This document shows, one piece after another, positions 2,076-35,333 of a stretch of 64,000 nucleotides of DNA; the stretch's first letter is position 1; each line of letters starts with the position of its first letter. Both the position numbers and the translations under genes were made by a program. A model generated the notes under the pieces. That model made no database searches. It was not told the DNA's origin and worked only from the letters and a program-made list of their open reading frames with translations. Source of the DNA: Heterodontus francisci (taxonomy: Eukaryota); the NCBI RefSeq assembly GCF_036365525.1, contig NC_090399.1, positions 31,094,430-31,158,429 of the forward strand, given 5' to 3'.

Positions 2076-2079
2076 TTTT

Positions 2080-5120: not shown

Positions 5121-5129
5121 ATTCACAAT

Positions 5130-12255: not shown

Positions 12256-12274
12256 GATTCTGCTTTCTATTCTA

Positions 12275-12745
12275 GAGCCACTAGAAAGGGTGCAGAGAAG
12301 ATTTACGAGGATGATACCAGAAATGCGTGAGCACACACATCAGGAAAGAGATGAGCAGGCTGGTTCTCTTTTCTATTGAAAAAGGAAGGCTGAGAGGTGA
12401 CGTAATAGGGGTCTTCAAAATTCTGGACATGGAGAAAATGTTTCCATTTTTGGGGAAGAGCATCACGAGAAGCCATCAGTATCAGATCGTCACCAAGTAA
12501 GCTATCAGGAAATTCAGAAGAAACCTCTTTACCCATAGAGTGGTAAGAATGTGGAACTCGTTACCACAGAGAAGTGAAGAATACAAAAGCATTTGAGGAG
12601 AAGCTAGACAAGCAGATAAGGGAGAAAGGAACGGATGGTTATGGTGATTGATTTAGATAAGGAAAAACGGGAGGAGGATCGAGTACAGCATAAAATGCCG
12701 GTATGGACTGGTCTGTTTTTGTGCCTTAAATAATCCTATGTAAGT
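12275..12745 (+). mobile_element. CR1 3' fragment
   Basis: LERVQRRFTRMIP-like and LRGDVI-like coding remnants followed by a CR1-type tail. Confidence 0.7.
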
Positions 12746-15682
12746 TATATACAACAGGAACCATTATCCTTTTCATTACAGTGAATGGAAGGTAAAATTG
12801 GTTGGGCTATGTAATGGGTCGCCAATCCAATATTACCCGATTTGCCACATTGCTAAAAGATGTTAGCTCAGATGTTGCGGCCGGTGGCAAAGGAACGGCG
12901 CTGGCTTGCCACAAAATCCATTGACCAGGAACTTTTGAGCGGAGACGTGCTGTCGTCGGCTTCAGAGCCACTGCTGCGCCCTCCACAGAGGATCTGTGGC
13001 ATGTGTGAGCAGGGCAAGAAACAACAAGGTTCTTCAACCAATCAACTTTGAAAATCCTCACTGAGACACGCAAACTAAATGGGCAAGTATAACGCAGAAG
13101 GTAGAAATTATGTACAGAAAGCGATATAAAGATTTTGGTGAAAATGCAATGAAGCGAGAGATAAAAGAAACAGGCTGAAAAGGTATTTTTCAATCTCCAC
13201 AATAAGGATGAGCGCTATTAGCCCTACTCTTATTCCCAATGCAAAACCTGGGCCATTATTCAGCATAACTACTTGCACTTATATAGCGGCTTTAATATAG
13301 AAGTAATCCTCCAAGCACTTCATAAAGACTGAAGGAAATTGAGCCAAATTGAGGTCTTAAGAGGGTTGCGCAAAACGTAAGCCAAAGGCATGGGCTTGAA
13401 GGATTGCCTGATAGGAATGCAAATGGAATTGCAGTGGCTTAAGGGAGGGAATTGCAGAGCCGAAATGGGGCTGAAAGGCTGGTGGAGAAATGTGCCGCCG
13501 GATATAGAAGAGACCGGCATCTGTTGAATAGAGAATTCTGGGTTGTGTGATGAATGCAATTATAATCTCTTCGGATGGCTACTCGTTAGGTGTAATTTTA
13601 ACTTTGCCGAAGCTCTAAAATTGGCGAAATCATATTGGCTGCCCATTGGGCACACGCTCGAGTTTCCTGTCATTGAATTCAATAGAAAGGAAAATTGGAC
13701 CTGGTGTATAATTTCATCTGACATGTGTCAGCCCATTTCACCGGACTATCATTCTCTTCCTGAGGTCTGATGCTGGCCTCCTACTGTTGTGTCACCTATA
13801 ATGCTGACCCGTAGTGAATACCACTGTCTTTGTCTCAGTCTGAAAAACTGATTTTCCTTCCATTAAAATCAGTTGAAGAATAATGTGAAGGTTATGCAAA
13901 GGCGTGGACTTCTCTTGTTCCAGATTTTCGTTAGGGTGATGCTTTTATCGAGAGCTGTTATTATAGAAAAATGTCTCAAAGCTCTTCACAAATTCTCGAA
14001 CAAACTCTGACCCAGCAAAGACGAGTAAATGAAAACAAGTGCTGTTGGCCCCTTAAGAGATGAATTCCAAAGGATTGCTAAGTTGTTGCCCACCAATGTC
14101 CCAAGGAGCGGATGTGAATGAACAATTGGAACAGATATTATTTGTCTCTTCCAATCAGTACTTTCGATGTTGCCTGTCGATCCCTGAATAATTCTAATAC
14201 TGCACTTAGGAGCACCTAACGGCAACGTCACTTACATAGCACATACAGCTGAAACCTTTACAGAGAACGTGAAATTCATGCACAAATGGTGCAGTTGTTT
14301 CCCTAGTCATTAATCCTTGTGCATATGAAAATTGCATTGTGAGGAACATGCAGATGAAGAAACTCTTGCATCCATGGAAAAATGCGTCACCTATTTTTGG
14401 ACAGTGCAGTTCAAGGTGGAATTACGCCGCTGATAATCTGTAGTGTTGCTGCAACGATTATGTCTGTTCAATAATCTGAAGATGAATGCGTATAAATCTA
14501 GTCTGCTTCTCTGCACTGAGCTCCAGACTTTTTTTTATAAGTTGGATGACTTTTTAATCTTCAGGAAGTTAAGGGATACCATGTTTGCGAAATGGGATAC
14601 TTTCCCATTCCAGGTAACTAGGTTCAGCATTCGCCACTTGCCGGCAGCTGTGGCACAATCAGCCCTTCCTTCTGACATGCTGTATCTTGCCTTAATAACA
14701 ATCTCTGAAGCCACACTCAGTACTGTGTCACTGTGATGGTCTTATTTCTCATACCATTCAAGCTTCTTGCCTTTCTGAGTAAGCTATATCATATAATACC
14801 AATTAATTTAAAAGAAGGGATTATTTTCTTACGCTAATCATACCGTGAACAGAGAGTTCAATGCCACCAGTCTGTGCTGGACTATGTTGGGGTATTTAGG
14901 GGGTCCTCCAATATATTGACTGATTGCTTATTACGATAAGTGCTTAAATTAATCTCAAGACTATCCACACACACACAAACACAGGCATATATAGACTAAC
15001 TTTTTATTTCAAATTCATTTAATTAACTGATTTGAAATTCGCTGGCCGCCATGGTAGGCTTTGAAATCATGTCTCCTGTTCATTGATCCAGGCCTCTGGA
15101 TTCTTAATAATGCAACGCAACCATATGGTTCTGTTACCGTTTGTTCCCAGCTTGACAAGTTGTGTCCTCTGTTTGTAAAGCTCCATTATCTCACTGTTAA
15201 AGCTGTAGTTATTAAGAAAATTTACGTGAACTGATTAATAGTATTAATACATTTTAGGGGATGTCGGCCAAATCGCAAATACATCAACAATCCTCAAGTG
15301 GTTAAAAAGCGCTTTACAGTGGGTAATCCAGTCCTCATCGAGAGCATTTGCCTTAGCTATCATCATCGAGTTTCAACCCTTTACCCCCATCCCAAGTATG
15401 AATCCTCAAGCTGATATCTAACATCAGAATTCTGTTGAACTGCCTTGGAAAAAGGATAAAGTGAAGGCTGCGAGATGTAATGCGTTTTCCCTTTTTGACG
15501 GCCTGGAACAGGATGTCTTAGTGTAAGCAATGGTGTAAAGAATCTTTGGGGGCAATTTAAACTCTGGGCAGTAGCATGCAATGGGTGAAATCAAATTCAC
15601 CACTCAACATATGTCGACCAAACAAAGTATGGTCGGGCACTCTGCAAAATGGGCCGTCCATTCCATATTGACAATTTTACAC

Positions 15683-19529: not shown

Positions 19530-19577
<48 letters not shown>

Positions 19578-19578
19578 G
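19518..19578 (+). repeat. (GATA)n microsatellite at the start of duplicated unit 1
   Basis: Direct reading of about 15 GATA-type units. Confidence 0.95.
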
Positions 19579-19696
19579 AGTTGAGTTACATGTCTCCACA
19601 ATATGCAATAATGTAGAATGTTGGAGGTTAACATCCTAAATGGCTTCAAAATCAATGCTGTAATTCCAAAAAAAAGCCACACGCACAACATTGTCT

Positions 19697-19777
19697 TTAG
19701 CGGCGGATGAACGTTTTTTTTCGCTTTCCTTCATTGAAGTTCAGTGTACAATATTGTACATTGTCCGCTTCATTTGT
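19697..19777 (-). pseudogene. Terminal cytoplasmic exon with ITIM (copy 1) of NKp30-like receptor
   Basis: Acceptor tttatttctcttcaaacag, then phase-0 TNEADNVQYCTLNFNEGKRKKTFIRR*. VQYCTL (19759-19742) fits the ITIM consensus (I/V/L/S)xYxx(L/V). Confidence 0.7.
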
Positions 19778-19890
19778 CTGTTTGAAGAGAAATAAAATAT
19801 TAATTTAATTAACAGTATATATTACTTACAAAGAAATAAAGTCGTGTTATTTTTGTCCTCGTCGAACTACATATAAATATATATTCATAT

Positions 19891-19982
19891 GTTTGAGATA
19901 TTATGGTATAAAGCCGCATTTTCTGTCCAACTTGTTTTGCTGCAATTCTCCTCAAGCTTTCCTGTCAACATTAGAATAAAAA
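19891..19982 (-). pseudogene. Cytoplasmic exon 1 (copy 1) with YxN-type tyrosine motif; donor mutated
   Basis: 92 nt, phase 1 to 0, open: (V)FILMLTGKLEENCSKTSWTENAALYHNISN. The donor position reads atatga where copy 2 has gtatga. 113-nt intron to the ITIM exon. Confidence 0.55.
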
Positions 19983-20244
19983 CTTTACAATGACAATACT
20001 GTAATTAACGAGTTATAACAATTCAGATGCCTTTTCTGGCCACTCTACTAAGTGAACCTGATTGATATTCTGCAAATGTGAAATATATTCATCAACTGAA
20101 GATGGGCAAAATCATGGGCAATTTATTAACCATGTTTCAGTTTCTTAGCATGATGAAAATATATAGTGAGACAATAATACTTCTGTAGAATTTATGTAAA
20201 GAATTCTGGATGGATTTATCTGTGTGATTGCTATTAGTAATAAT

Positions 20245-20836
20245 TGCTGGAAATAGAGACATTTTGTCAAAGCTTTTCCGCTTGCACGCATCAGGACAAA
20301 TGGCAAGTATACCAATGTCAGGGAAAGCACAGATATGCAAAACTGAACTCAACTGCATGAATTGCCGAGTTCATAAGTTAAATGTGATTCTGCGATTCGA
20401 CATCATATGCCCAATAACCCTCAGTGTGCTAAGAATTATGCTGACAACCAACTGGGCCCTATTCTTTGCAGACAGAAAGAAGATGTGCACACATTGCGCC
20501 TGTTTCAGCTGAACAAAATAAGTGACAGTCATTCGCTGGTCCATGACTCAGGGCAATACCTTGACCAATCAGAGTCAAGCTGTCTGGTTTAAATTCCAAA
20601 CATAGCTTGGCAATTAACTATTTGTCACCATAAACGGCTGCATTCCCCATGGCAACGCCTCTACCAATCAGAGTCCACTTGCCAACTAATCAGCATTCTC
20701 TTCTCACACGGTATATATGTGTTGCTTTCCCTTACATTGGTATTGCTTTGATTTTTCCTTCTGAGTGCAAGAACGAACAGCTTCGACAAAATGCCTCTAT
20801 TTTCAGCAATACTCAAGTTCTACACTGCCAAACGAT
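20245..20836 (+). mobile_element. Penelope-like element, second family; internally deleted, with about 85-bp inverted termini
   Basis: 13-bp TSD tattagtaataat (20232-20244 / 20837-20849). Peptide remnant NNPQCAKNYADNQ..GPILCRQKE resembles a GIY-YIG C-terminus. Inverted arms each carry a degenerate hammerhead motif. Confidence 0.75.
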
Positions 20837-20887
20837 TATTAGTAATAATATAATGCCAGATAGCTAGACAGAAAAATAGATAAATAG

Positions 20888-21999
20888 AAGAAAATACTGC
20901 AGGTTCTGGAAATATGAAATAAAAAAAAAATAAAATGCTGGAAATACTCAACAGGTCTGGTAGCATCCGTGGAGAGAAAGGCAGAGTTAACATTTCAGGT
21001 CAGTGACCCTTCATCAGAATTGACAGAGGTTAGAAACGTAATAGGTTTTAAGCAAATAAAGTGGAGGTGGGGGAAGAGATAACATAAGGCAAGGTGTTGA
21101 TGGTACAGGGTTACAGAGAATAACTGAGCAGAAGGTCATGGAGCAAAGGCAAACGGTGTGTTAACAGTGTGTTGAAAGACAAAGCGATAGTGCAGAGAGG
21201 GTGTTGATGGACAGAAAAATGAACAGTCCTGGCCCAAAGCAGATACATGAAAAAAACAGTGGGCAGACAAATGGTAAGAAAAATGAACGATTAAGCAAAA
21301 TAAAATAAAATGTTGAAATAGCAAGCAATTGGATGCTCGGGGTAACGCAGATTGGGTGACAGCTTTGCGGAACACCTCCTCACAGTCCAAAAACATAACC
21401 TCGAGCTTCCGGTTGCTTGCCATTTCAACACACACCCCTGCTCTCATGCCCACATATCTCTCCTGGGCTTGCTGCAGTGTTCCAGTGAACATCAACGCAA
21501 GCTCGAGGAACAACATGTCATTTACCGATTAGGCATGCAACAGCCTGCTGGACTGAACACTGAGTTCAATAATTTCAGAGCATGACGGTCCCCATTTTAT
21601 TTTCAGTTATTTTTTCTTTTTTTATTTTGTTTCATCATTCATTTTTCTTACCACGTGCCTGTCCACTGTTTTTTTTCATGTTTGTGCTTTGGGCCAGGGC
21701 TGTTCATTTTTCAGTCCATTAACACCCTCTCTGCACTAACGCATTGTCTTTCAACACAATATTAACACACCCCGTTTGCCTTTGCTCCATGACCTTCTGC
21801 TCAGTTATTCTTTGTGACGCTGTCCTTTGTGACCTTGCCATTTGTTATCTCTTGCCCTACCCTGCCTGATTTGCTTAAACCCTATTACGTTTCTAACCTT
21901 TGCCAGTTCTGATGAAGGGTCACTGACCTGAAACATTAACTCTGCTTCTCTCTCCAAAGATGCTGCCAGACCTGCTGAGTATTTCCAGCATTGTTAGCG
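20888..21999. mobile_element. Palindromic Penelope-like (Neptune-type) insertion made of two inverted 3' ends
   Basis: 12-bp TSD atagataaatag (20876-20887 / 22000-22011). The plus arm encodes the endonuclease C-terminus GDSFAEHL...LPVACHFN...RKLEEQH.IYRLG..QPAGLN.EF. The left arm is its reverse complement with an internal deletion. Confidence 0.9.
21905..21941 (+). ncRNA. Minimal type I hammerhead ribozyme motif in Penelope terminal repeat
   Basis: AGTT-CTGATGA-AGGGTCACTGACCT-GAAA-CATT-AACT: intact CUGAUGA and GAAA boxes, a stem II hairpin, and AGTT/AACT stem I. Activity is untested. Confidence 0.6.
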
Positions 22000-22087
22000 A
22001 TAGATAAATAGTTTGAGTTGCATGCCTCCATAATGTGCAATAATGTATAATGGCGCTAACATGCTAACTACCTTGAAGATCAAACTT

Positions 22088-22189
22088 TTAACAAATCGCA
22101 CGAAACCTTGTCTTTATCCACAGATGATTGCTTTTCTCTCTTTCATTGAAGCTCAGTGCAAAACACTGCACATTATCGACTTCATTTGC
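22088..22189 (-). pseudogene. Terminal cytoplasmic exon (copy 2); ITIM tyrosine lost
   Basis: Same acceptor tttatttctcttcaaacag. Reads ANEVDNVQCFALSFNERE...; TAT>TGT (Y>C) at the ITIM position. Confidence 0.65.
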
Positions 22190-22295
22190 CTGTTTGAAGA
22201 GAAATAAAGTACCTTACTAAAATATATTAATTAGAGGAAAACAAAAGTTCGGTTGTTTTATTTTCATTGAACAACACATAAATATTCATTCATAC

Positions 22296-22390
22296 ATTAG
22301 AAATGTTTATTGTGTGTAGACACATTTCCTGTGCAGTTTCCTTTGTCAATCTTTCCCCTCAAGCTTTTCAGTCAACATTTAGCACTGAAA
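22296..22390 (-). pseudogene. Cytoplasmic exon 1 (copy 2) with two in-frame stops
   Basis: 95 nt, phase 1 to 0, acceptor ttttaaag, donor gtatga. Homologous to 19891-19982. 106-nt intron to the next exon. Confidence 0.55.
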
Positions 22391-23723
22391 CTTTAAAATG
22401 ACACCCTCGAGTTAAACAGTTGCAGAAAACCATGTTGCGGCAAATTTAGCTACCAAGTGAATTTGATTTCTATCATGTATATAAAAATATATTCATTAAC
22501 TGACTGTGGGCAAAGTCACAGGGAACTTATTAACCTTGTTTCAGTTTCTTAGAGTTATTATGAAACGACAACAATATGGTTAGCATTTCATGTGAATATT
22601 TGTGGATTGATTTATTATCACAATCATTGTTATTAATCATATATTACATTTAAGCATTTTCAGATGTTACAAGTGCATTACTTGATGCAGTATTGAATGA
22701 TAGGACATAAAAAAGGTTCTGGGCTGGTTCATCTAGCTGAGCACTGCTGGGCTAGCCGAACGGGTGCTACAAATAACTTTAGTACCGCTTGGCTAAATTG
22801 GCAAAAAATAAGCAGTAGTAGCTTTCATTGCTACTGAATGCCGGTTGGAAATTGCAGCAGCAAAGGGCTTCACTCTGATGTTTATTTATAGCTCAAGCAA
22901 CTGACGACGCTGTCTACCGAGGCTCACAGCTGAAGATTTAACACTGGTACGCACTTCAGAAGAACAACTGGCAACTCTGGAACCATAACTCAACATCAAA
23001 GCATAGATGAAGAAAAATATTCAACAATATCAATTGTTCGGAATTTTGATCGGAACCTCGATTGTAACCAAATTAAGCTGCAATGCTTAACACCAGGATG
23101 AAATTGATACAAATAGTTTGAACTTGAAAAAAATTGTAACGGCAAATTATTAAAGAATTGTTACAAGTGTGGAAAAAGGTTAATCATACTGAATTTTAAT
23201 CTGCTAGAGTAAGAATGCTATTTATTTTCTCTATACTGTAGCAGTACTATCCTTCTAACTTTTTTGTTAAGAAAAGGGAAAAAGACAATTTTTAATGTCA
23301 TGACCATTCAACGTTTAAACTGAGACTGACGCTAAGACATTGGTTACATTTAATATAAACCATCTTCATAATGAAGAATCTAAATTCTATATTGGCTCGT
23401 AAGTTTCAAGAAGCTGTAATTGATAACATGATGCAAGGACAATAGTTAGTCCTGTAACAGAAAAAAAAAATCTGGGTAAATATAATCTTCTCAGTTTGGG
23501 TTTGTGTCGTATGAGGGAATTAACTGCTTGTTAAAATGCGAAAGAAAAATAGTTAACCATTTCCTTTGATAAAATGGAAATTATATGTAACAAGAGCGAA
23601 ATTATGGAGTAATTTTCGTTGTTCCAACGAAAAAAATATCTTGTTAGTAAGAAAACCAGTTTATTAGTTGAAGCTGCTGAGAAAGTCAATTAGACTCCCA
23701 TGGCATGGAGTTATGCTTTTGTG

Positions 23724-23760
23724 TGAGTCATAGTGGTCGGTGTGAGGGAATTATATAAAA
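23724..23760 (+). promoter_or_regulatory. Candidate Pol II promoter: AP-1 site plus TATA box
   Basis: TGAGTCA at 23724-23730 and TATATAAAA at 23752-23760, 55 nt upstream of the ATG of a leader-like exon. Confidence 0.4.
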
Positions 23761-23814
23761 AGTGATAGTTTGTAATGAGCATTGCGATTTGAAAGGTTTT
23801 GAGCAGCCGAAAGA

Positions 23815-23905
23815 ATGAAGCTCAGAACTGGATTGTATTTAAATCATCAGGTGCTGTTGCAAATATTATCTTCTCTGTGGATATTTTAGTACTTTTGCAT
23901 GGACG
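23815..23905 (+). pseudogene. Signal-peptide-like first exon with an internal stop
   Basis: MKLRTGLYLNHQVLLQILSSLWIF*YFCMD-G then gtatgc. Phase-1 donor as expected for Ig-superfamily leaders. TAG at 23887-23889. Confidence 0.45.
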
Positions 23906-24284
23906 GTATGCTTAAGTCTACACGTTTCAATTCAAAGCCTCAAGAACTCTTTTGAATTTTAGGAATATATAAAAAAAATCTAATCATGAATATCATCAAC
24001 AATCATCAAACAGGTATCACTGTGTTTAAGATAAGCACACGCGTGCTCATTTTGAGGTTCCATGTACCTGATTGCCAACTCGGCACGAAGATCCTTCATC
24101 ACGTTTCTCTATATAATGTAACAGAGAGAAAATGTAGAATGTTAGAAAGATCAGTGCCCAGAAATCGCCTATCAGCACTCCCACGCTTGCCCCCCCATTA
24201 TGATCCTAACTCATATAGTTTAAAATGCAAATGTAGTACCACAAAATATAAAGCACATCCATAATATAGATATTATTGTATTCA

Positions 24285-24711
24285 TATAGAAAGGGATAAG
24301 GAAAATGCTGGAATGTATTATGCGGGAAGTTATAACAGATCATTTAGAAAATCTCAATGCAATAAGGAAGAGTTAGCATGGTTTTTGAAAGGGAAATCAT
24401 ATTTGAATAATTTATTAGCGTTCTTTGAGGAAGTAACAAGCAACGTGGATAAAGGGGAACATGTGGATGTGGTGAACTTCGTTTTCCAGTCAGCCTCTGA
24501 CAAGGTACCACATCAAAGGTTACTAAATAATGTAAGAGCCCATGATATAGGGGGCAAGATATTAGAATGGATGGAGGATTGGTTTGCTAACAGGAAACAG
24601 ACAGTAGTCAGAAATGGGTCCTTTTCAGGTTGGCAAGCTGCAACTAGTGGAGTGCCACAGGGATCAGTGCTGGGGCCTCAAATAGTTACAATATACATCA
24701 ATGATTTGGAT
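24285..24711 (+). mobile_element. CR1 RT fragment
   Basis: KSYLNNLLAFFEEVT..VDKGEHVDVV, SGVPQGSVLGP, IYINDLD, followed by an abrupt switch to unrelated sequence. Confidence 0.85.
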
Positions 24712-25560
24712 TGTACCAACCGTGGTTGGAGCAACACACTGTCAGTTCAGTCCCTCATTCCACAGGTCGCAGTATCATATTAAGCTTTCACACCGAATTG
24801 GAAAAGCAGCCAAATTAAACAGTCTAGTAACCCCAGAATGAAATAGACCAAACCAAGTATCTTTAGAAAACAACAAATTAACTATTTATTAAAAAGCTAA
24901 ATCTTAAACATGATTAAGATAAACCTATGTCTAAAGACCTTGTAACTTCTTTTAATCTAACTCCCCCATTCACAGATTCACTCAAAAACTAATAGTTAAC
25001 TGGTTTTAAAAGTGGAGATTTTAAAAATTATCTGTCTCTTAAGAATAAATAAGGTAAGAAAGTCTTTGTGTGTTACATTCTCGGTTGATGAGGTCTTCTA
25101 ATGTGAAAATAGTCAAAGGTCACTTGAAGTTTTCACATGGATTTGATGCAAATAGTCCTTCAGTAAATAGGCATTCAACTCTTCGGCTGCATCAAGCATT
25201 CAACAGTTCTTTCAACGACGAGCACAGCAATAAAAGGTTTCTTGAAAAAGAAAGCTTGTCTTCTTTACTCAGGGTATTAACTTGGCTTGTAGCTCCTTGT
25301 ACACACTTCTACTGAGAGGAAATAGGCAGCTTTCTTCTCTTCAGTACACTTCACTAGAAAGTCTCTCCAAACTGTTTCAGACGGTTTTCTGTCAGTTCCA
25401 CACAGCCAAGTGGAAATATTACTATGTGACCTCTCAGTCTTCTGTTGTTGCCCTCGGTAACAAAAATGCAGCTGCTGCACACTGTGTCTCAGAAATTCAA
25501 GAAGTTCTCTCCCTTAAAAGTGTCCTGTTTTTAACAGAATCTTAACGGCACGCACACAGT
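24712..25560 (-). mobile_element. LTR-like insertion truncating the CR1 fragment
   Basis: Begins TGT exactly where CR1 homology stops. Minus-strand AATAAA near 24885-24890. Non-coding. Right end not resolved. Confidence 0.4.
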
Positions 25561-25647
25561 TTTTAATCCGTGGAGAAAAAATACAGTTGATATGATCACC
25601 ACAAAGAAGGGTTTGAGATTGCATATGAAAACGATAACGATAACTAC

Positions 25648-25788
25648 CTTTAACTTTGTTTCAGCAGAAAATAACAGTGGTAATCGCTGAGAACAGCGCT
25701 AGTACAAATAAAGTTGTGATGAAAAACAGGGCTGTATGTACATCCAGGGAACGACCCGGCTGTTGCGTTTGATTTCTCGTCCTCACTG
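25648..25788 (-). pseudogene. Stalk plus transmembrane exon of NKp30-like receptor, no basic residue in the TM core; premature stop
   Basis: Acceptor ttgttttcttgtag; 141 nt, phase 1 to 1: (A)VRTRNQTQQPGRSLDVHTALFFITTLFVLALFSAITTVIFC*NKVK-G; donor gtagtt. TGA at 25663-25661. Confidence 0.75.
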
Positions 25789-26187
25789 CTACAAGAAAAC
25801 AAATGCTATTTTCTCTTTCTTTCTTAGCGCTCGCCTCCTCCTCCACCACAACTACGTGGACAAAGTAATAGTTTAATACTTGAAGAGTTAGTTGCAAAAA
25901 TGCTGCATCTGAAGGAAGATAATTTGACACTAACCTAGCTGCCTGGAAACTCGCTTGATCCGGTGAACACTAGTTTTATAACTCGCCCCATTTTACTCGC
26001 TATTAACTTCAATGGAGAATAACATTGACACAGTGTAAACCGGAGCTCCACCCTATCCCGGGCATTTCCATCCCAGCAACTTATTTTACATTACACCCGA
26101 TATTCGTAATTTTAATTTTACTTCAACACTGATGTGTGTTTCCTTTAATCTACTTTTAAAATAAAAACATAAAATCAACACGCTCAC

Positions 26188-26503
26188 CTGTCACAGCAAG
26201 TGTTGTTCCTTGCCCATAATATTCACCAGAGGCTATAAAATCCACTTTGCAATAATAGGTCGCCGAATCGCTCACTCTCACTTTTGTTAATTGAATCAAA
26301 GCATCAATCTGGCCCAATTACCCGGCCTCTGTATTCTGGCGTACTGTTGGAAAGTTCAGTTCCACCTTTACTGTTCCTGTACCACTTGCAATCACCTATT
26401 CCCCTAAGTCATTCGTACACACAGTACAGAACCGCCACCTTCACCTCGCTTATATTAATGTATGCCACGCTTTGAACAACTGTAACATTCTCAGCACTCA
26501 CTG
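26188..26503 (-). pseudogene. NCR3-like: NKp30/NCR3-like germline-joined VJ Ig exon (pseudo); not represented in the ORF track
   Basis: Acceptor cttttacag, donor gtgagc. (A)VSAENVTVVQSVAYINISEVKVAVLYCVYE*LRGIGDCKWYRNSKGGTELSNSTPEYRGRVIGPD / DALIQLTKVRVSDSATYYCKVDFIASGEYYGQGTTLAVT. Stop at 26411-26409; frameshifting deletion near 26306. Confidence 0.9.
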
Positions 26504-28099
26504 CTGTAAAAGAGCAATGCTTCACACTGAAGCCAGAAACTTACGCTGTCTTTAAATGTGTTTGTAATTCCGCTGCTAAAGTTATGCAGTAGTCTGCTAA
26601 CAGGGCAATGCTAATGTGTGCTTGTCTCAGGTGCGGTCTTGTATTACGGACATTCATTGACTAAAATAAAGCGATTAACTCTTTCTCTAGAATAGCGGGC
26701 CAGGAAATATCATACACAACTTCAGTTCGGTTTCAAATATGAGAATAACATTTGTGACTATTTTGATGAAGGTTCGGGAGGACATTCATGAAAATGAGCT
26801 GATTTATATTTATAAACATTAAACTTTGTGATCATCAAATTGTAATAAACGTTAAATAGTGTTTTTGGAAGATAAATGGTACGCGTGTTAATCCTTCCAT
26901 AGTAATACTGAGAACACAATGTTACATATTGCATTATAAATAGTTTACATTTGAAATTATTGTCAGAACTATCAGTTTGAAAGCGCACAGAGGAAGTACA
27001 GGTAATGTAAAAATATCTTCAAACGGATATAAAATGCACCGCTGTTGTACATAACATTCTCATGAGCACAATGTCAAGTGCATGCCATTAACAGAAACAA
27101 ATCAATGTTTTGATTCAGGTAAGGCCATCTGTTTGAAAATTAGTGAGGGCAATTTTAACATTTGGTAATAGTGGCAAACGGACATTGGCTGATCTGCCGC
27201 CCATTACATGTCTCTCGCGACTTCCAGAAAGAAACATCAGATGAGGCAAATAATGGGAGTGGAGTTCGCATATGCCTATTTTACACTTTTACTAGTTAAT
27301 ACTGCCTCTCTGTTGGTAAGTATCAGTTTTGATGAGTTTATCGCTCTGAGGGGGAAATTTTCACTTCGACCGATGGTGTAAAACAGGCTGGAATGAATTA
27401 TACACAGCACCCTCTTAGAGGACCCGGGCTCACTTTTGTTACTCTTTTCATTTAAAAAAAAATAATTGTAGAAACTCTTACTAAATGTTTTTATATTTCT
27501 AGCTAGCTTTCTTACATGCTCTAATTTCTCCCTCTGTTTTTAGTCATTCTTTGCTGGTTTTTCAAATCTGTCCAACCTTCTGACCTACCAATAATCTTCG
27601 CAGAACTGTACACTTTTTCTTTCAATATGATATGTGATTATTTGTTTCGACTGTTGATTTTTTAGGATTTGCTCAGTTTTTATGTCTCAGTCTCATAACG
27701 AATCAACAATAGTAACTTATATTGCAAGACCAGAATAGGTAAAAATAGATTCAGTAAAATACTTGCGAAAGAAGCAAGATAATCAGATATCAATTTACGT
27801 AGCCCAAGGATCTGTATTCATCCATATGCAAAGATGTTACATAGCGTCTCAAAATAATTCAAAGCTAACCTTAAATACAGACATTTCTACCCAAAAACTA
27901 GCAGCATCAAAGCAACTCAGAACTAACATGCCTTTGTAAATGTCCCATAACTGCTAGATTAATGTTCTACTGTTTATATTAAATTGATATTTGCTGGATG
28001 GCTTCAGGCGTTTGGGAAATTTTCTGTGGCCTTTGTATGTAGTCACATGGTAAATATGTAGAGAAAGATTTCCTGTACTGGACCTCTCCAGATAATTCC

Positions 28100-30380
28100 C
28101 GATCATGTTTGGAATGAATCTATTTTGGTATTTGATAAAACTGCTAACTGTCGACAAGCTGACAAAAGCCGTCTGGTCCTTCGAGATGAGTAAAACTCCC
28201 GAAAGCAACGGCTTACTGGTTGAGTTGTATTCGACTCTGTGGGATTGGATCGTCTCAAACCTGCTGGAAATGTACGAAAGTATGCTTCTGGACGACAGCA
28301 TGTCAGATCCATGAGCAAAGGCACCATTAGCCCCATCTACAAGCGGAAGGGGGAGAGGGAGAAAATCATAAATTGGCAGCCCACCTGACTGCTTCATGTG
28401 GACAACAAAATTCTGTCCAAAATCATTGCCAGTCGGGTCACGTCTGCTCTGGTGTTGGTGATTCACCCTAATCAGACCTGTACTGCACCCAGCAGTAAGA
28501 CCTCTGATAGCCTCACGCGACTAAGAGATACGATCATCAATGTATGGGACGGGGGTGGTGGTGGGGGGGGGGGGGTGGTGTGGGGGGTGCGGGGGGTGGA
28601 CACCTGCCTCATCAGCCTGGACCAGAACACGGCTTTTGATAGGATATCACACACCTACATGATGGACATTCTCTCAAAAATGGGGTTTGGGGAGGGAATC
28701 TGCATTTGAATTCAGCTGCTCTACACAACCCTCAGTTGTGCAACCTCAATCAATTGGTGGGAATCAGAAAGTTTTCTGATCAAATATGGAGTCAGCCATG
28801 ACTGTCCTCTCTCCCTTGTCTTGGTTGCTTGCTGCATCGAACCTTTTGCTGAGTCCATTAGGAAGGATGCGGGCTAAAGGAGGTGACAATCGCAGGCAGT
28901 GTAGGCACTCAGGTCAAAACCTCTCTGGACATGGACGACATCACTGTTTTCTGCTCAGAGCCGCTGTTGAGCATCTTTGACCATTTTGAGTTGGCCTTAG
29001 AACCAAAATAAACTGCAGAAAGAATGTGGCCATGTTTTCTGGGAACTGGCCCACCAATCGTTTGTCCCCTTTACTGTCAGATCAGACTGCCTGAAGGTGC
29101 AAGTGATATGGTTTGGAGGGGCCAGGTCATTTGCCAAAAACTATAAGGAACGACCAGCCATGGTAAACAGAAACAGATCATCTGGAAGCAGTGCTCCTTT
29201 TCCATTGGGTAAGAAACTGGTCATTTGATGCTGCTGTACGTGGCGCTGGTCTGGCCCATACCCCACTCTTGCGCCATGCCAGTCACCTAAGCCATCCTCC
29301 GCTTTAGTTGAAGATCGAAAATGTATTGTGTCCACAGGGAAGCAATGTTCAAAGCTCTAGATAAAGGAGGAAAACACTTACCCAACATCACCCTCATGCC
29401 GATGGCTACCATTTTGTGCAGCTGCATCAAACTGTATGTAAATCCCTAATATGCAAATCCCAAATGTGCTGAGGTTCTATCTGACTCCGGTGTTATGAAG
29501 AATGGATCTAGCTATGTTGCGCTGTAAAGTTCCATTCAGTTGCATCGGGCCCTACCACCTGTTGCTTGTGGAAAAGTGTGTGCAGAAAAATACCATTGAC
29601 CACAAATCCATCAGGCAATGGTCTGAATGTAACGTCCTCAAGGCTCTGTGGGAAAAGGAGATGGTGGATCTGTCAGATTGTTTTCCCGAGCAATCTGTCA
29701 AAGTCATCTGGCAGAATGCCACATCGCCAGAGTTTCAAACAAGCACCAAGACATAGCTTAGCTGGTGGTGAGAATGCCGTCCCTGTCAGATCTTCCCTGC
29801 ATGCTTGCAGTCTCCCTGCCTCCACACACAGCCCGCGAAGTGGCTGTGGTGGGGACGAGACCATTGTCTACTTCCTTCTGGAATGTGGCTTCAAAAAACA
29901 GGTATGGAAAGAAATGCAATTTTTTTTGTCGGGGTTCATCCTGAGCAGTTCCGTAATGAATGACTGGGTGCTCTACGGGCTGTTCCCAGGGATGCACACT
30001 GAAATAAACATCAACTGCTACTGGAGGACCATCAACTTGGTGAAAGACACTCTTTGGTCTGTCTGAAACATGCTGGTCTTCCAGTGCAAAGAGTTGTCCA
30101 CGGCAGAGTATTTCAGACTGGCAAATTCCAAGGTCCAATATTAAGTACTGGGGGATGCAATAAAGCTTGGGGCAGCCGCCGCAAAGGCTCAATGGGGAAA
30201 GGTGTAAGATGTTCCCACAATCGTATACCAAAGAGCTGGAAACCTTGTAAAACCCCTTGTGCTGGCAGAAGCAGAGAATGTTTTTGGTATATAATCCAAA
30301 TGCACATTGAAAACATAACTGTAACGGTAAGAGTAGTGAGACACCTCATCTTCTGTATTGAAAGAAACTGATCTTTATTG
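28100..30380 (+). mobile_element. Tx1/L1-clade LINE, RT and C-terminal zinc-knuckle region, decayed
   Basis: KTPESNGL.VELYS.LWDWI, VDNKILSKIIASRV, ISLDQNTAFDRISH.YM..IL.KMGFGEGI, PRSGCGGDETI...LLEC. Confidence 0.85.
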
Positions 30381-31800
30381 CACTTTATGAAATGTCCAAT
30401 TTGAATTATTTAATGAGGTTTTTTTTAACAATTTTTTTTGGGTGGGGGGGGGGAATAAAATAAAACGACGATGTTGCTTACGATGGTTCTGCAATTATAC
30501 CATAGGGAATATTTCCCATTTATATTTTAATAAACGCACAAATTAGGTGTTTGCACAATATCATTTTTTCGCTGACAATAATGATTGCTGATACATTGCA
30601 TTTTCACATGATGTCGCTAAGGCATTATAGAGTACGTTTCCGGCTGGCCATCCAGGCGTAAAACTGACTTGCACATCAATTACCTGCAACAGACGCAATT
30701 TGTATTTCCTTTGAAGTGTTACTTTTCATTTAGTGCTGAACTGAAAAATTAACTTGTCCATCTTCACCACGGATGTTGACGAGTCGACTCAATGTTTCGA
30801 GCATTTTTGCTTTTCTGTGAGCTTTCTGGCACCTGCCGAGGATTAAAAACAATGGGTATGCATAGTTCTCCAGTTATACGCCCCTGCTGAAATTCAGTTC
30901 CGTTGACTTCTATACAACTCAGTATTGGGTGAGTGGGATAACGGGTGGTAAAAGTGATTCCACCTGAAGTGCAACTTCAGTCATGTCCAATTTCATCTCT
31001 AATATATTTAATCTGCAGTCTATGCCAATCAGAATTGTCCTTTTTGTATTGCGATGTCCAAACACGTCTAAACACTGTAAAGCAAATCACATTGCTGTAG
31101 ATTTACCCTTGGCTTTCAGATCGGCTGCTCTTTATAGAAACCAGCATGATTTACATGTGCATTAAAATAAATGGAATGAAATTGGTCTTGGACTGCAGCA
31201 CAAAACGGGCGAATGGAAAATCGCAGGCAGTTTTACGTCCTGCCCATTTTCCATTGCTGTAACTTCAAGAGGAAAGAAAAGCATGTGCCCAAAACCAATT
31301 GTACCCCAAATGGGATGCAAATCAGACACCTTCTTTAACAAGCAATGGATTCACTCCACCAGGCAATGAACATGAACATTATCCTCTAGTAAGCCCTAAA
31401 ACTTGGCATGTGAGTATATTCAAACAGTTAATTTTTTTAAACTTCACTGTTTAAATTTTAACGATAGATAAACAACAGCACAGATAACAGCCCCAGTAAA
31501 AGAGTGGCCAGCGAACTAGGAGATTACTTTCATTGTGATAGAATTTCAGCTTTCCGCTAGGCATAAAGCTGGCATTGCAAATAGTCGCGATGAATGGATT
31601 TCAGGTTGGAAGCTTATAGCAGCAATACAATATTCAGTAAGGCACGATTACCCTTTATTCCCTGCAATTGTTGCTCTGTTGCTCACACTTATTCGAAATC
31701 TGACCGGTGTAAAATCTTGAAAAGGTCACATGTTCCATACAGTCACTCAAAGTTACAACTTCCAATCAGATACCAGATACTTTTTTTTTCTGATTTCCAC

Positions 31801-32103
31801 AAATTAACGCCAAGAAGTTCGTAGTTATTCAAAAGGTGCCCATGATTCTGGCAGAGGAAGGACAGGCAGTCTTCCTCCACTGTACCTACACAGCCAAGGC
31901 CTCCAAGGTGACAGGGTCTTACAGTTGGTACATGGACAGCAGGAAAGGCATAGAAGTTTCCAATGAACAAAGGACGGATCTACAGACACAAAAAGGATTT
32001 CTTTCATATTGGTGATGCGTCCAAACTACTAAAGGATGTGAAAGTGAACGATTGAGGCAACTAGGCGAGGAATATGGAGCAGGAACAAATCTCACCATGA
32101 GAG
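31801..32103 (+). pseudogene. NCR3-like: NKp30-like VJ exon V1 (pseudo; two deletions, YYC lost)
   Basis: INAKKFVVIQKVPMILAEEGQAVFLHCTYTAKASKVTGSYSWYMDSRKGIEVSNE / KGRIYRHKKDFFHIGDASKLLKDVKVND / RQLGEEYGAGTNLTMR-G; donor gtcagg. Acceptor position reads CAC. Confidence 0.9.
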
Positions 32104-32482
32104 GTCAGGCATTCTCTTGTCGGCTTGATGGGCTGGATGGCCTCCTCTTGCTCCAATGTTCCTATGCTATGTGGTTTGCTGTCAAAGTTTGCTTTTTAAT
32201 GCTCCTGCGAATTGTCTCAGGACGTTTTGCTACTGTTGAAGGCGCTAGGTAAATATAAATTGTTGTCATTGTCCAGTGATGGAAACAAGTTAATCAGCTT
32301 TTGCCTTAGTGCATAATTACATCGAATGTCCAGCACAGAATAGGCCATTCGGCCCAACCGTTCCATTCTAGTATTTATACTCTACACATGCCTGTTCCCA
32401 TTCCTCTTCATCAACATGCACGACTGTGTCTCAAAGTTCCAACTTCCAATCAGATAGCAGATACTTTTTTTCTGATTTCCAT

Positions 32483-32824
32483 GAATTAACACCGAGAATT
32501 TCACTGTTGTTCAAAAGGTGCCCAGGATTCTGGCAGAGGAAGGACGGACAGTCTTCCTCCCCTGTACTTACAGAGCCGAAATCTCCAACGTGACAGGGTG
32601 TTATAGCTGGTGCAAGGACAGCAGGAATGGCACAGAAGTTTCTAATGGGACAGCAGAGTATACAGGACAGATCTACAGACACAAAGAGGATTTCTTTCAT
32701 ACTGGATATGCGTCCATACTAATAAAGGACGTGAGAGTGAACGAGTCCGGGGCGTATTACTGCAGAGTGCGAATGATGCAACTGGGCGAGGAATATGGAG
32801 CAGGAACAAAGCTTACTGTGACAG
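32483..32824 (+). CDS. NCR3-like: NKp30/NCR3-like germline-joined VJ exon V2; open frame but non-canonical acceptor
   Basis: INTENFTVVQKVPRILAEEGRTVFLPCTYRAEISNVTGCYSWCKDSRNGTEVSNGTAEYTGQIYRHKEDFFHTGYASILIKDVRVNESGAYYCRVRMMQLGEEYGAGTKLTVT. Shares EG...FLPC, G.EV.NGT.E..G, I.DVR, Y.CRV...LG...G.GT.L.V with human NKp30 as recalled from memory. Acceptor position reads CAT; weak donor gtccgt. Confidence 0.85.
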
Positions 32825-33033
32825 GTCCGTCATTCTGCTATCTGAAATATCAGTTGAGCAATGGGAATGGGGGTGGGGTTGGGGGGAGAATCAATTGCAC
32901 AATGTGGTGGCCCTATCTCCAACTGGCGCATCTGTCAGAATGGCTGCCCTGTAGTGGACTCCCAAGACGGAATCAGCCTGAGCTGCAGAGAGGAGACTAT
33001 TTAATAATTTTAAATAACCAGTTCCTGACTGGA

Positions 33034-33372
33034 GGTCGCACAGTGGCATAGTGGTTAGCACCGCAACCTCACAGCTCCAGAGACCCAGGTTCAGTTCTGG
33101 GTGCTGCCTGTGCGGAGTTTGCAAGTTCTCCCTGTGACCGCATGGGTTTCCACAAGGTGCTCCGGTTTCCTCCCACATCCAAAGACTGCAGGTTGATAGG
33201 TAAATTGGCCATGGTAAATTGCCCTTAGTGTAGGTAGGTGGTCGGAGAATTGTGGGGATGTGGTCGGGAATATGGGATTAATGTAGGATTAGTATAAATG
33301 GGTGGTTGTTGGTCGGCACAGACTCGGTGGGCCGAAGGGCCCGTTTCAGTGCTGGATCTCTCTATGACTCTA
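33034..33372 (+). mobile_element. HE1-type V-SINE (tRNA head, V central domain, CR1-like tail)
   Basis: A-box-like tggcatagtgg, B-box-like ggttcagttc, V-domain ggagtttgcaagttctccctgtg...ggtgctccggtttcctcccaca, and tail gggccgaagggcc. Confidence 0.85.
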
Positions 33373-33641
33373 AAGTCACAAAGCATTTACCGCCTGTTAT
33401 ACCACACATGTGACATTCAGTGCTACTGAACTCAGTGAACTGAATATGGGTCCATGTATACAATGCACGACCAATGTAAAACCTTTTTTGCTTCATTTGT
33501 GCTGAAGAAAATAAGAACATAAGACACAGGAGCAGAAGTAGGCCATTCGTCCCATCGACCCTGCTTTGCCATTTAATAAGATCATGGCTGAACTGATTGT
33601 GGCCTTAACTCCACTTTTCTGTCAGGCCCCCATAAACTTTG

Positions 33642-34999: not shown

Positions 35000-35333
35000 C
35001 CCCATAACCTTTGACTCGTTTGTAGATCAAAAATCTGTCTAACTCTGCGTTGAATATATTCAATGACCCAGCCTCCACTGCGGAAGAATTCTAAACACGT
35101 AATGTCCCTTTGAGAGAAGAAAGTCCTCCTCATCTCCATCTTAAATGGGAGAACCTTTATTTTGACAATAGCGGAGGAACCTCGGCATTAAAAACAGCAC
35201 ATGTTGGAAAGCAAACCTGTTGGTTGGTTACATATATCAAAAGATGTGCCGACAGAAACAAGTCCACTCTGAAAGCCGTCTGTTCCTGCACGGCTGTCAT
35301 AAAGTAGCAATTTTAAATTTATTTGGTTTCTCT

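What the first reader, a model, noticed from the sequence alone, without database searches (positions are those of the whole stretch)
19697..26503. Inhibitory-type (ITIM) NKp30-like receptor gene hidden among the repeats
Seen: four minus-strand exons join with consistent phases: V 26503-26188 (1-1), TM 25788-25648 (1-1), Cyt1 (1-0) and Cyt2 (0-stop). The product is a germline VJ Ig domain ending YYGQGTTLAV, a TM core without Arg/Lys (TALFFITTLFVLALFSAITTVIFC), a YxN-type motif (LYHNI) and a canonical ITIM (VQYCTL). Known: mammalian NKp30 is activating, using a TM Arg to recruit CD3zeta/FcRgamma, and has no ITIM. VJ-type paired receptors with ITIM members exist as teleost NITR, hagfish APAR and Xenopus XMIV. 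Inference: this is a pseudogenised member of an elasmobranch paired activating/inhibitory NKp30-like family, and intact paralogues may exist elsewhere. I cannot tell whether such a family is already published.
Basis: partly seen in the sequence, partly recalled or inferred. Interest (0 to 1): 0.9.

Follow-up and report, generated by a model that had tools for sequence, protein, structure and literature searches.

The report
Dead shark NKp30-family inhibitory receptor gene
This is a decayed, non-functional copy of a horn-shark immune-receptor gene whose intact sister gene, already in the public annotation, carries two inhibitory (ITIM) signalling motifs, so it is a fairly ordinary pseudogene of a known family.

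Summary
They belong to a pseudogene. An intact paralogue lies on the same horn-shark chromosome: XP_067865381.1, named "NCR3-like" by NCBI (P0014).

P0014's exons map onto the window in order:
- V exon, 26503-26188
- TM exon, 25788-25648
- ITIM exon 2, 19777-19697

Lesions:
- two Arg-to-TGA stops, one in V and one just after the TM
- a V exon 23 nt shorter than P0014's, which shifts the frame
- Tyr-to-Cys in ITIM 1, whose exon is also 4 nt short
- indels after ITIM 2
- no leader exon found

It found no credible match among 171 family proteins, so I reject it.

ITIM-tailed relatives are annotated in white shark and catshark, and a bamboo-shark relative has a TM Arg instead. The V type scores about equally against SIRP and NKp30 structures.

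The shark NCR3 family is published (Kinlein 2021), but I could not read that paper. This scan already reported ITIM-bearing NKp30-family genes elsewhere in this genome. RNA evidence is inconclusive.

The parts
26188..26503 (-). VJ-type Ig V exon of the pseudogene. It has an in-frame TGA at 26411-26409, where P0014 has Arg. The frame changes near 26314-26307. The span aligned to P0014 is 313 nt against 336 nt, so 23 nt shorter.
   Evidence: 74% and 71% identity to P0014, E 1.9e-38. (Pfam V-set, E 2.1e-6, for the last 43 codons).
25648..25788 (-). Stalk and transmembrane exon (141 nt, phase 1-1). A second AG 3 nt downstream would give a start at 25785, which fits P0014 better. The TM has no charged residue. 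A TGA at 25663-25661 replaces the Arg that follows the TM in P0014.
   Evidence: (64-65% identity to P0014 residues 123/124-172, E 3.9e-14 and 2.2e-13).
24068..24108 (-). Cytoplasmic micro-exon of 41 nt, phase 1-0, encoding (E)KRDEGSSCRVGNQ. Acceptor is tatatag, donor is gtacat.
   Evidence: It matches P0002 202-220 (74%) and P0014 194-209 (69%). The same position in P0157 and P0158 reads GKRDER and EKHDER.
22107..22189 (-). It reads ANEVDNVQCFALSFNERE... The ITIM tyrosine is replaced by Cys (TGT at 22165-22163). The exon is 83 nt against 87 nt in P0014, so the frame shifts before ...SSVDKDK. A GT donor follows DKDK.
   Evidence: 70-75% identity to P0014 207-226 and P0002 218-237..
19697..19777 (-). 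ITIM exon 2, the terminal exon, including the TAA stop. It reads TNEADNVQYCTLNFNEGKRKKTFIRR then stop. The ITIM VQYCTL is intact (19759-19742, Tyr codon 19753-19751). The sequence after the ITIM matches relatives in two different frames, which points to indels.
   Evidence: 85% to P0014 236-255, 90% to P0022 141-160.. (P0157 187-222, 63%, E 2.8e-8).
19891..19961 (-). It has a CAG acceptor but AT at the donor. I read it as intron sequence that was copied along with the ITIM exon, not as an exon.
   Evidence: no credible match among 171 family proteins.
19567..20220 (-). Duplicated tail unit A: about 410 nt of upstream intron, ITIM exon 2 and about 130 nt downstream.
   Evidence: 68-69% identity to unit B over 557-637 nt.. 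(D1-D3, spacing 2404-2432 nt).
21999..22615 (-). Duplicated tail unit B, holding ITIM exon 1.
20934..21992 (.). Palindromic high-copy repeat element lying between the two tail units. Its inverted arms are 20934-21308 and 21617-21992, 86-93% complementary.
   Evidence: I1-I4. (thousands of contigs at 90-95% likeness over 20.1-22.1 kb).
24301..25300 (.). Dispersed repeat in the intron between the TM exon and the micro-exon.
   Evidence: depth of hundreds to thousands in all three runs, against 0 in the neighbouring bins 22301-23900.

Best explanation
The stretch 26.5-19.7 kb (minus strand) is a dead paralogue of a horn-shark gene. That gene encodes a single-V-domain, type-I membrane receptor of the shark NCR3 (NKp30) family cluster.

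The live version is P0014/P0151 (XP_067865381.1/XP_067865380.1). Its exon order is leader, VJ-type V, stalk plus uncharged TM, short cytoplasmic exon(s), then two tandem copies of one ITIM exon. The two ITIM tyrosines therefore sit 29 residues apart.

Inferred, not shown: such a tail would be phosphorylated by Src-family kinases, would bind the tandem SH2 domains of SHP-1/SHP-2 and would damp activation, as KIR, LAIR-1 and SIRP alpha do. That comparison is from recall.

The copy in this window can no longer make such a protein:
- two CGA-to-TGA-type stops, as judged against Arg in P0014
- a frameshifting deletion in V
- loss of the first ITIM tyrosine, plus a 4-nt loss in that exon
- indels behind the second ITIM
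- no recognisable leader exon

The 'tandem duplication of the signalling module' is not a relic beside the gene. It is the gene's normal two-ITIM-exon design, which predates the split between this copy and P0014.
For: 1. Each exon of P0014 finds its counterpart in the window, in the same order and strand.
   - V: 74% and 71% identity
   - TM: 65%
   - micro-exon: 69%
   - ITIM-1 to unit B: 70% (unit A scores 59%)
   - ITIM-2 to unit A: 85% (unit B scores 50%)
2. P0014 lies on the same 74,466,956-nt contig as P0001 and P0002. NCBI names it NCR3-like.
3. The lesions can be read directly from the sequence.
4. Exon lengths disagree with intact phases. V is 316 nt. ITIM-1 is 83 nt against 87 nt.
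5. Relatives have the same architecture: white shark P0157 (one ITIM) and P0022 (two ITIMs, 29 aa apart), and catshark P0158 (one ITIM).
6. The locus sits inside a cluster of NKp30-like exons.
   - The V exon at 32485-32832 (+) hits human NCR3 structures at E 4.5e-15. The next family scores 4.3e-5.
   - The tail exons of P0001 lie at 60.0-50.9 kb.
7. No leader exon was found in the 5.2 kb upstream. The best score was 25, against 21-32 in 30 shuffles.
Against: - I could not see the public annotation of this very locus. I do not know whether RefSeq calls it a pseudogene or skips it.
- In run X1 alone, low-depth contigs (1.4-14.7) fall in the bins that hold ITIM-2, ITIM-1 and the micro-exon. All three runs have 3.1-11.5 in the bin holding the 3' part of the TM exon. 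Some transcription of this locus, or of a copy at least 90% alike, is therefore not excluded.
- No joint between exons was among the 15 joints shown. Another 49 were not shown.
- The runs are only guessed to be RNA.
- P0014 residues 173-193 have no counterpart in the window. P0157 and P0158 lack that stretch too.
- The lesions were judged against a paralogue that is 65-85% identical, not against an ancestor.
Confidence: 0.85

Rival explanations
1. One reading: a four-exon gene (V, TM, Cyt1 at 19.9 kb with a YxN motif, Cyt2 with an ITIM). The 22-kb unit would be only a spare, decayed duplicate of the signalling module.
For: - Cyt1 has a CAG acceptor and the phases would fit.
Against: - No match to Cyt1 among 171 family proteins. 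Only 4 chance-level rows, at E 4.3-9.1, came from two long multi-domain proteins.
- The donor is AT.
- P0014 and P0022 splice ...DKDK of ITIM exon 1 straight to TNE(A/V)DN of ITIM exon 2.
- The micro-exon at 24.1 kb supplies the phase 1-0 link that P0002, P0014, P0157 and P0158 all have.
Confidence: 0.03
2. The locus is a transcribed pseudogene, or a null allele of a gene that is intact in other horn sharks (presence/absence-type polymorphism, as in KIR or NITR clusters).
For: - Low-depth contigs in run X1 fall in exactly the exon-bearing bins.
- Receptor clusters of this kind evolve by birth and death (general knowledge, recalled).
Against: - At least six independent lesions point to long decay, not a recent null allele.
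- The depth pattern in X1 also fits short unspliced contigs. For example, 5.85 then 1.38 in adjoining bins suggests one contig running into the intron.
- The kind of run is only a guess.
Confidence: 0.1
3. The V/TM type belongs to a SIRP-like lineage rather than to NKp30 proper. The gene would then be a single-domain SIRP-alpha-like inhibitory receptor that merely lies beside NCR3-type genes.
For: - The subfamily profile A2 scores SIRP beta/alpha V domains at 49.9 bits (E 2.6e-12), above NCR3 at 43.6 bits (E 2.2e-10).
- NCBI names the white-shark and bamboo-shark relatives 'signal-regulatory protein beta-1-like'.
- SIRP alpha is itself an ITIM receptor paired with TM-charged SIRP beta (recalled).
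Against: - The difference is only 6 bits. With P0014 alone, NCR3 (38.2) is level with SIRP alpha (37.7).
- NCBI names the horn-shark and catshark proteins NCR3-like.
- There is a single V domain and no C1 domains.
- The ITIM exon (xQY[ACS]xL...EGKR) is shared with other proteins named NCR3-like: P0035, axolotl P0093 and lungfish P0104. It is also shared with P0002, whose V type is clearly NKp30-like.
- The locus lies within the NCR3-like cluster.
- No tree with true SIRPs could be built, because none was among the fetched proteins.
Confidence: 0.25
4. The ITIM units are a dispersed repeat or belong to an unrelated neighbouring gene.
For: The units are embedded in high-copy repeats at 20.1-22.1 kb.
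Against: - Only two copies occur in the 64-kb window.
- Depth is 0 in all three runs over 22301-22700, and 0 in two of three runs over 19701-20100. The true repeats reach thousands.
- The order and strand of the exons match P0014.
- No other gene's exons lie between 26.5 and 19.6 kb.
Confidence: 0.02

Closest known systems
Heterodontus francisci 'natural cytotoxicity triggering receptor 3-like' isoforms X2/X1 (XP_067865381.1/XP_067865380.1; P0014/P0151)
   Same: Same chromosome-scale contig. Same exon order. Identity is 74/71% (V), 65% (TM), 69% (micro-exon) and 70% and 85% (the two ITIM exons). The TM is uncharged.
   Different: The public protein is open and has two intact ITIMs (VQYSAL, VQYCTL) 29 aa apart. 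The window copy has two stops, frameshifts and Cys in place of the first ITIM Tyr. P0014 also has 21 extra residues (173-193) that were not found here.
Shark NCR3 family (Kinlein et al. 2021, Immunogenetics 73:333). Nurse-shark cDNAs MT914154-914161, with proteins such as QTT61898.1 and QTT61904.1.
   Same: A multigene family of divergent, non-rearranging VJ-type single-V receptors in elasmobranchs. Two nurse-shark members were among my hits: P0038, and P0058, which has a TM Lys and a 5-aa tail. The accession range is listed as 'NCR3 genes' in PMC12227049 (passage seen).
   Different: I saw the paper only as a reference. It is not held. Whether it describes ITIM tails or this subtype is unverified. 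'Eight subtypes' and MHC linkage are from my recall of its abstract.
Mammalian NKp30 / NCR3
   Same: VJ-type V domain with a GxGT-L-V J-like strand. NCR3 structures are among the best matches (E 1.1e-8 for P0014).
   Different: Mammalian NKp30 has an Arg at the stalk/TM border. This was seen in donkey P0128 and possum P0088. It signals through CD3 zeta/FcR gamma (recalled). The shark type here has an uncharged TM and ITIM exons. Sequence similarity to SIRP V domains is as high or higher.
SIRP alpha / SIRP beta paired receptors
   Same: VJ-type N-terminal V domain, which is the best profile match (49.9 bits). One partner has an ITIM tail and the other a TM-charged short tail. Compare P0014 with bamboo-shark P0021, whose TM reads ...IAIRVIVLALF....
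   Different: SIRPs have V-C1-C1 ectodomains (recalled). These shark proteins have one V, or two V in P0021, and no C domain.
Tandem-ITIM inhibitory receptors (KIR2DL/3DL, LAIR-1)
   Same: Two canonical [SIVL]xYxx[ILV] motifs about 30 residues apart in the intact paralogue (29 aa). This spacing suits tandem-SH2 phosphatases (recalled).
   Different: Unrelated ectodomains. Here the spacing comes from duplicating one 87-nt exon. In this window the first motif is dead.
Xenopus XMIV, teleost NITR, hagfish APAR
   Same: VJ-type receptor families with activating and inhibitory members (recalled, not tested here). Amphibian and lungfish 'NCR3-like' proteins with a homologous xQYAxL...EGK exon were seen (P0093, P0104).

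Membership tests
Horn-shark NCR3-like subtype of P0014 (XP_067865381.1) | V exon homologous over its whole length | tested here: met
   74% identity (65 aa) and 71% (42 aa), E 1.9e-38.
Horn-shark NCR3-like subtype of P0014 (XP_067865381.1) | Homologous stalk/TM exon with an uncharged TM | tested here: met
   65% identity over 49 aa, E 2.2e-13. No D/E/K/R in TALFFITTLFVLALFSAITTVIFC.
Horn-shark NCR3-like subtype of P0014 (XP_067865381.1) | Micro-exon followed by two ITIM exons, in order | tested here: met
   24108-24068, 22189-22107 and 19777-19697. Each ITIM exon matches its positional counterpart best: 70% against 50%, and 85% against 59%.
Horn-shark NCR3-like subtype of P0014 (XP_067865381.1) | Open reading frame with a leader exon, i.e. 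a working gene | tested here: not met
   TGA at 26411-26409 and at 25663-25661. Frameshifts in V and in ITIM-1. No leader exon found.
NKp30 / NCR3 in the strict sense | Non-rearranging VJ-type V domain | tested here: met
   A single exon runs through ...YYCKV...YYGQGTTLAVT without an RSS-type break. Pfam V-set.
NKp30 / NCR3 in the strict sense | V domain closer to NCR3 than to any other V family | tested here: inconclusive
   P0014 alone: NCR3 38.2 bits, SIRP alpha 37.7 bits. Profile A2: SIRP 49.9 bits, NCR3 43.6 bits. The neighbouring V exon at 32485-32832 is clearly NCR3-like: 58.8 bits against 26.7.
NKp30 / NCR3 in the strict sense | Basic residue at the stalk/TM border for CD3 zeta/FcR gamma pairing | tested here: not met
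   No charged residue in the TM core. Mammalian members show LLLRA... (P0128, P0088).
NKp30 / NCR3 in the strict sense | Binding of B7H6; linkage to the MHC | not testable with these tools
   No shark genome map or binding assay is available. MHC linkage of shark NCR3 is recalled from an abstract.
ITIM-type inhibitory receptors | Cytoplasmic [SIVL]xYxx[ILV] downstream of a TM | tested here: met
   VQYCTL at 19759-19742. The first motif has degenerated to VQCFAL.
ITIM-type inhibitory receptors | Protein is made, and its phosphotyrosine recruits SHP-1/SHP-2/SHIP | tested here: not met
   The reading frame is broken upstream of the tail, so no such protein can come from this locus. Recruitment itself is not testable here.

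The most novel reading that the evidence does not exclude
The ITIM exon (xQY[ACS]xL..E(G/R)K..) may be an ancestral, shuffled module of the whole gnathostome NCR3 family.

- It is shared by at least three divergent horn-shark V subtypes (P0002, P0014, P0035). It is also present in lungfish and axolotl 'NCR3-like' proteins.
- In sharks, tandem duplication of this one 87-nt exon produced a two-ITIM tail with KIR-like 29-aa spacing.
- Use or read-through of the donor after ...DKDK would switch between one-ITIM and two-ITIM isoforms.

NKp30 would then have begun as an inhibitory or paired receptor. The purely activating mammalian form would be derived. This pseudogene would be one snapshot of birth-and-death turnover in that cluster.
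Probability: 0.4. Interest if true: 0.4.

Novelty: new member of a known kind. Interest (0 to 1): 0.2.

Why it matters
The locus itself matters little: it is a dead copy.

Its use is as a marker. It shows that the horn-shark NCR3-family cluster evolves by birth and death. It also shows that the two-ITIM-exon design is older than the duplication that gave this copy and the live gene XP_067865381.1.

At family level, NKp30-type VJ receptors of sharks, lungfish and amphibians commonly carry ITIM tails, whereas mammalian NKp30 is activating. That bears on the original role of this very old, non-rearranging V-J receptor. But it is visible in public gene models and probably in print, so this finding adds one pseudogene and a corrected exon model, not a new principle.

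Tried and rejected
1. Rejected.

2. Leader exon.
   - A scan for Met plus hydrophobic run plus a phase-1 GT donor in 26504-31800 gave 17 candidates, none resembling the family leaders.
   - A Smith-Waterman search with four family leaders scored at most 25, against 21-32 in 30 shuffles.
   - None was found.

3. A tblastn hit at 33041-33103 (-) to the N-terminus of P0156 looked like a leader. By my reading it is a repeat-derived stretch in a doubtful gene-model start. Dropped.

4. RNA evidence.
   - The look-up of sequencing runs listed only 3 runs of one sample. Their kind is guessed as RNA and they hold 0.02 of the words.
   - Read laying on 19701-25700 gave mostly repeat-derived contigs and no listed exon-exon joint. 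15 joints were shown and 49 were not.

5. Literature.
   - Six searches found no open paper that describes the tails of shark NKp30-family receptors.
   - Kinlein 2021, Ohta & Flajnik 2015, Flajnik 2012 and Ohta 2019 are not held. The PMC id used for Ohta 2019 came from recall.
   - I make no claim that ITIM tails of shark NCR3 are unpublished. Supplementary files were not consulted.

6. A tree to decide between SIRP and NCR3. Not built. None of the 30 proteins whose names I looked up was a bona fide SIRP, and sequences from memory are barred.

7. The first word-based protein searches found few relatives: 2 of 29 candidates and 4 of 368 candidates. The full HMMER scan with P0002 was what found P0014 (754 proteins at E<=0.001, best 150 listed).

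8. Census of tails.
   - It covers only hits of 400 aa or less, uses a crude hydrophobicity window, and is not filtered by species.
   - I use it only for single examples, not for counts.

Full report
**What is in the sequence**

It reads in two frames:
- VSAENVTVVQSVAYINISEVKVAVLYCVYE, then a TGA at 26411-26409, then LRGIGDCKWYRNSKGGTELSNSTPEYRGRVIGPD.

The last 43 codons pass Pfam V-set (E 2.1e-6, 28.3 bits against a cut-off of 26).

The TM exon lies at 25788-25648. A second AG would allow a start at 25785. It reads (A)VRTRNQTQQPGRSLDVHTALFFITTLFVLALFSAITTVIFC, then a TGA at 25663-25661, then NKVK and the donor.

The terminal exon starts at 19777 after ...tcttcaaacag. It reads TNEADNVQYCTLNFNEGKRKKTFIRR, then TAA. 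It holds a canonical ITIM.

**Which genome and family**

A word-based protein search with the open neighbouring V exon (32485-33048, region 1-116) returned two Heterodontus francisci proteins, P0001 and P0002, out of 29 candidates.
- P0002 already joins an NKp30-like V and a TM to ...GNQANEVDYVQYSALNFNERERK....
- That tail matches the window at 24118-24062, 22192-22092 and 19780-19718.

The full HMMER scan with P0002 found 754 proteins at E<=0.001, of which the best 150 were listed. Local tblastn of those 150 against the window singled out P0014.

P0014 and its isoform P0151 are XP_067865381.1 and XP_067865380.1, 'natural cytotoxicity triggering receptor 3-like'. They come from Heterodontus francisci, on the same 74,466,956-nt contig as P0001, P0002 and P0035.

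**The corrected gene model**

P0014 maps onto the window exon by exon, in the same order and strand:

| P0014 residues | Window | Identity | Part |
|---|---|---|---|
| 15-79 | 26501-26307 | 74% | V exon |
| 85-126 | 26314-26189 | 71% | V exon |
| 124-172 | 25795-25649 | 65% | TM exon |
| 194-209 | 24109-24062 | 69% | micro-exon 24108-24068 |
| 207-226 | 22192-22133 | 70% | ITIM exon 1 |
| 236-255 | 19780-19721 | 85% | ITIM exon 2 |

The micro-exon is 41 nt and phase 1-0, with a tatatag acceptor and a gtacat donor.

The cross-matches are weaker: ITIM-1 to unit A is 59%, and ITIM-2 to unit B is 50%. So the two ITIM units of the window correspond one-to-one to the two ITIM exons of the live gene. 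The exon duplication is therefore older than the gene duplication.

In P0014 and in white-shark P0022, the first ITIM exon ends ...DKDK and is spliced directly to TNE(A/V)DN... of the second. The window has the matching GT donor after GAC AAG at 22107. In both proteins the two ITIM tyrosines are 29 residues apart, which is one exon length.

White-shark P0157 and catshark P0158 ('NCR3-like isoform X2') have the same V, an uncharged TM, the micro-exon and one ITIM exon. After ...DKDK they continue with (V/T)ACG..., where P0014 and P0022 splice. I take this as read-through of that donor.

**Why it is a pseudogene**

Measured against P0014:
1. ERLRG has become E-stop-LRG in the V exon.
2. The aligned V span is 313 nt against 336 nt, so 23 nt shorter. 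The exon's 316 nt cannot keep phase 1-1.
3. SYRNK has become FC-stop-NK straight after the TM.
4. ITIM-1 reads VQCFAL, with TGT at 22165-22163.
5. The ITIM-1 exon is 83 nt against 87 nt. SSVDKDK appears in another frame.
6. Behind ITIM-2, the relatives match in two different frames: P0157 187-222 in the stop-containing frame and RSSAAKD in another.
7. No leader exon could be found in the 5.2 kb upstream.

This many independent lesions is more than sequencing error would explain.

The ORF at 19961-19891 (…AALYHNISN) has a CAG acceptor but AT at the donor. Its copy at about 22.3 kb has CTG at the acceptor and GT at the donor.

Among 171 stored family proteins, only 4 rows overlap either copy. 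They have E 4.3-9.1 and come from two long multi-domain proteins.

I read Cyt1 as intron sequence that was duplicated along with the ITIM exon. The duplicated unit is about 620-650 nt, at 19567-20220 and 21999-22615. The two copies are 68-69% identical and 2404-2432 nt apart.

**Repeats**

Between the two units lies a roughly 1.06-kb palindromic element at 20934-21992. In the laid runs, depth reaches thousands to hundreds of thousands over 20.1-22.1 kb and up to thousands over 24.3-25.3 kb, from contigs mostly 90-95% alike. This marks dispersed repeats.

The tail units themselves are not such repeats:
- Depth is 0 in all three runs over 22301-22700.
- Depth is 0 in two of three runs over 19701-20100.

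**RNA**

Only three runs of one sample were listed. Their kind is a guess, and they hold 0.02 of the words.

In X1 alone, low depths fall in these bins:
- 19701-19900: 5.85
- 19901-20100: 1.38
- 22101-22300: 14.7
- 23901-24100: 9.19
- 24101-24300: 4.24

These are the exon-bearing bins. All three runs show 3.1-11.5 in 25501-25700.

The pattern would fit either short unspliced contigs or pieces of a transcript. No exon-exon joint was among the 15 joints shown; 49 more were not shown. Expression therefore stays open.

**Family placement**

The neighbouring V exon at 32485-32832 (+) is plainly NKp30-like: human NCR3 structures at E 4.5e-15, next family at 4.3e-5. The subtype of the pseudogene is less clear:
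- P0014 alone gives NCR3 38.2 bits and SIRP alpha 37.7 bits.
- A profile of P0014, P0157, P0158 and P0022 (A2) gives SIRP beta/alpha 49.9 bits and NCR3 43.6 bits.
- NCBI's automatic names waver in the same way: NCR3-like in horn shark and catshark, SIRP beta-1-like in white shark and bamboo shark.

In favour of the NCR3 family in the wide sense:
- the position inside the cluster
- the single V domain
- the ITIM exon is shared with P0002, whose V type is clearly NKp30-like, and with three proteins named NCR3-like: P0035 of horn shark, axolotl P0093 and lungfish P0104

**Is the family 'paired'?**

- Bamboo-shark P0021 has two V domains of this type, a homologous stalk/TM exon with an Arg in the TM (...LHIAIRVIVLALF...) and an 18-aa tail.
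- Nurse-shark NCR3 QTT61904.1 (P0058) has a TM Lys and a 5-aa tail.

Activating-type relatives therefore exist. A matched activating partner of this subtype in horn shark was not shown here.

**What is known**

[quoted passage not shown] I saw it only in two reference lists, and it is not held.

PMC12227049 lists MT914154-914161 as nurse-shark NCR3 genes (passage seen). My recall of the 2021 abstract (eight divergent subtypes, MHC linkage) is unverified. Whether the paper discusses ITIMs I cannot say.

Six literature searches found no open text on the tails of shark NKp30 receptors.

This scan has already reported intact ITIM-bearing and TM-Lys or ITAM-bearing NKp30-family genes 15.8-16.1 Mb away in the same genome. 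Those follow-ups filed them under the known family. Another note had flagged the tail duplication of this window.

**Mechanism and verdict**

The live relatives would work as inhibitory receptors. Ligand binding by the VJ domain, phosphorylation of one or two ITIMs and SHP-1/2 recruitment are all inferred from the motifs and from recalled knowledge of KIR, LAIR-1 and SIRP alpha. None of it was shown here.

The copy in the window cannot do this. It is a decayed member of a known, annotated family. Its exon model was partly wrong, and its novelty estimate was far too high.

Noticed in passing
window 31731-35800 (+): Three NKp30-like VJ exons lie in tandem on the opposite strand. The one at 32485-32832 is open and 72% identical to P0001. 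It hits human NCR3 structures at E 4.5e-15. The ones at about 31803-32117 and 35336-35680 carry stops or deletions.
   Followed up: partly
window 50933-60024 (-): Tail exons of the gene for P0001, whose V/TM part lies beyond the window's end. 52557-52456 is 100% identical to residues 275-308, including IQYTEI. 50968-50933 holds the last exon (FEYEELNAT). Weaker duplicate-looking matches lie at 53295-53194 and 60024-59956.
   Followed up: partly
window 45848-45958 (-): An exon-like match (76%, E 1.7e-10) to the C-terminal 37 residues of P0169, a horn-shark 'protein turtle-like isoform X1' with multiple NKp30-like V domains. It is followed by a stop. It could be a stray or a real terminal exon of another cluster gene.
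   Followed up: no
window 33041-33103 (-): Matches the first residues of bamboo-shark gene model P0156 (74%). The stretch reads like translated repeat sequence, which suggests that model's N-terminus is mis-predicted.
   Followed up: partly
window 20934-21992: A palindromic element of about 1.06 kb, with arms of about 375 nt that are 86-93% complementary. It is extremely abundant in the laid runs. Depth peaks at 21901-22100, reaching hundreds of thousands.
   Followed up: partly
window ~19530-19590: A (TATC)n-type microsatellite lies just downstream of the last exon. The same GATAGATA... start is kept at the end of tail unit B (21999-22052, repeat family D3).
   Followed up: no
window 2001-14000 and 46001-48000: Strong, block-wise GC skew: -0.23 to -0.31 over 2-8 kb, +0.16 to +0.31 over 8-14 kb, and +0.41 over 46-48 kb. 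This suggests long strand-biased repeats or an inverted pair. Not examined.
   Followed up: no
window 19701-20100, 22101-22300, 23901-24300 (run X1 only): Low-depth contigs (1.4-14.7) fall just in the bins that hold the pseudogene's cytoplasmic exons. Neighbouring non-repeat bins have 0. This may reflect weak transcription, a close copy or stray DNA.
   Followed up: no
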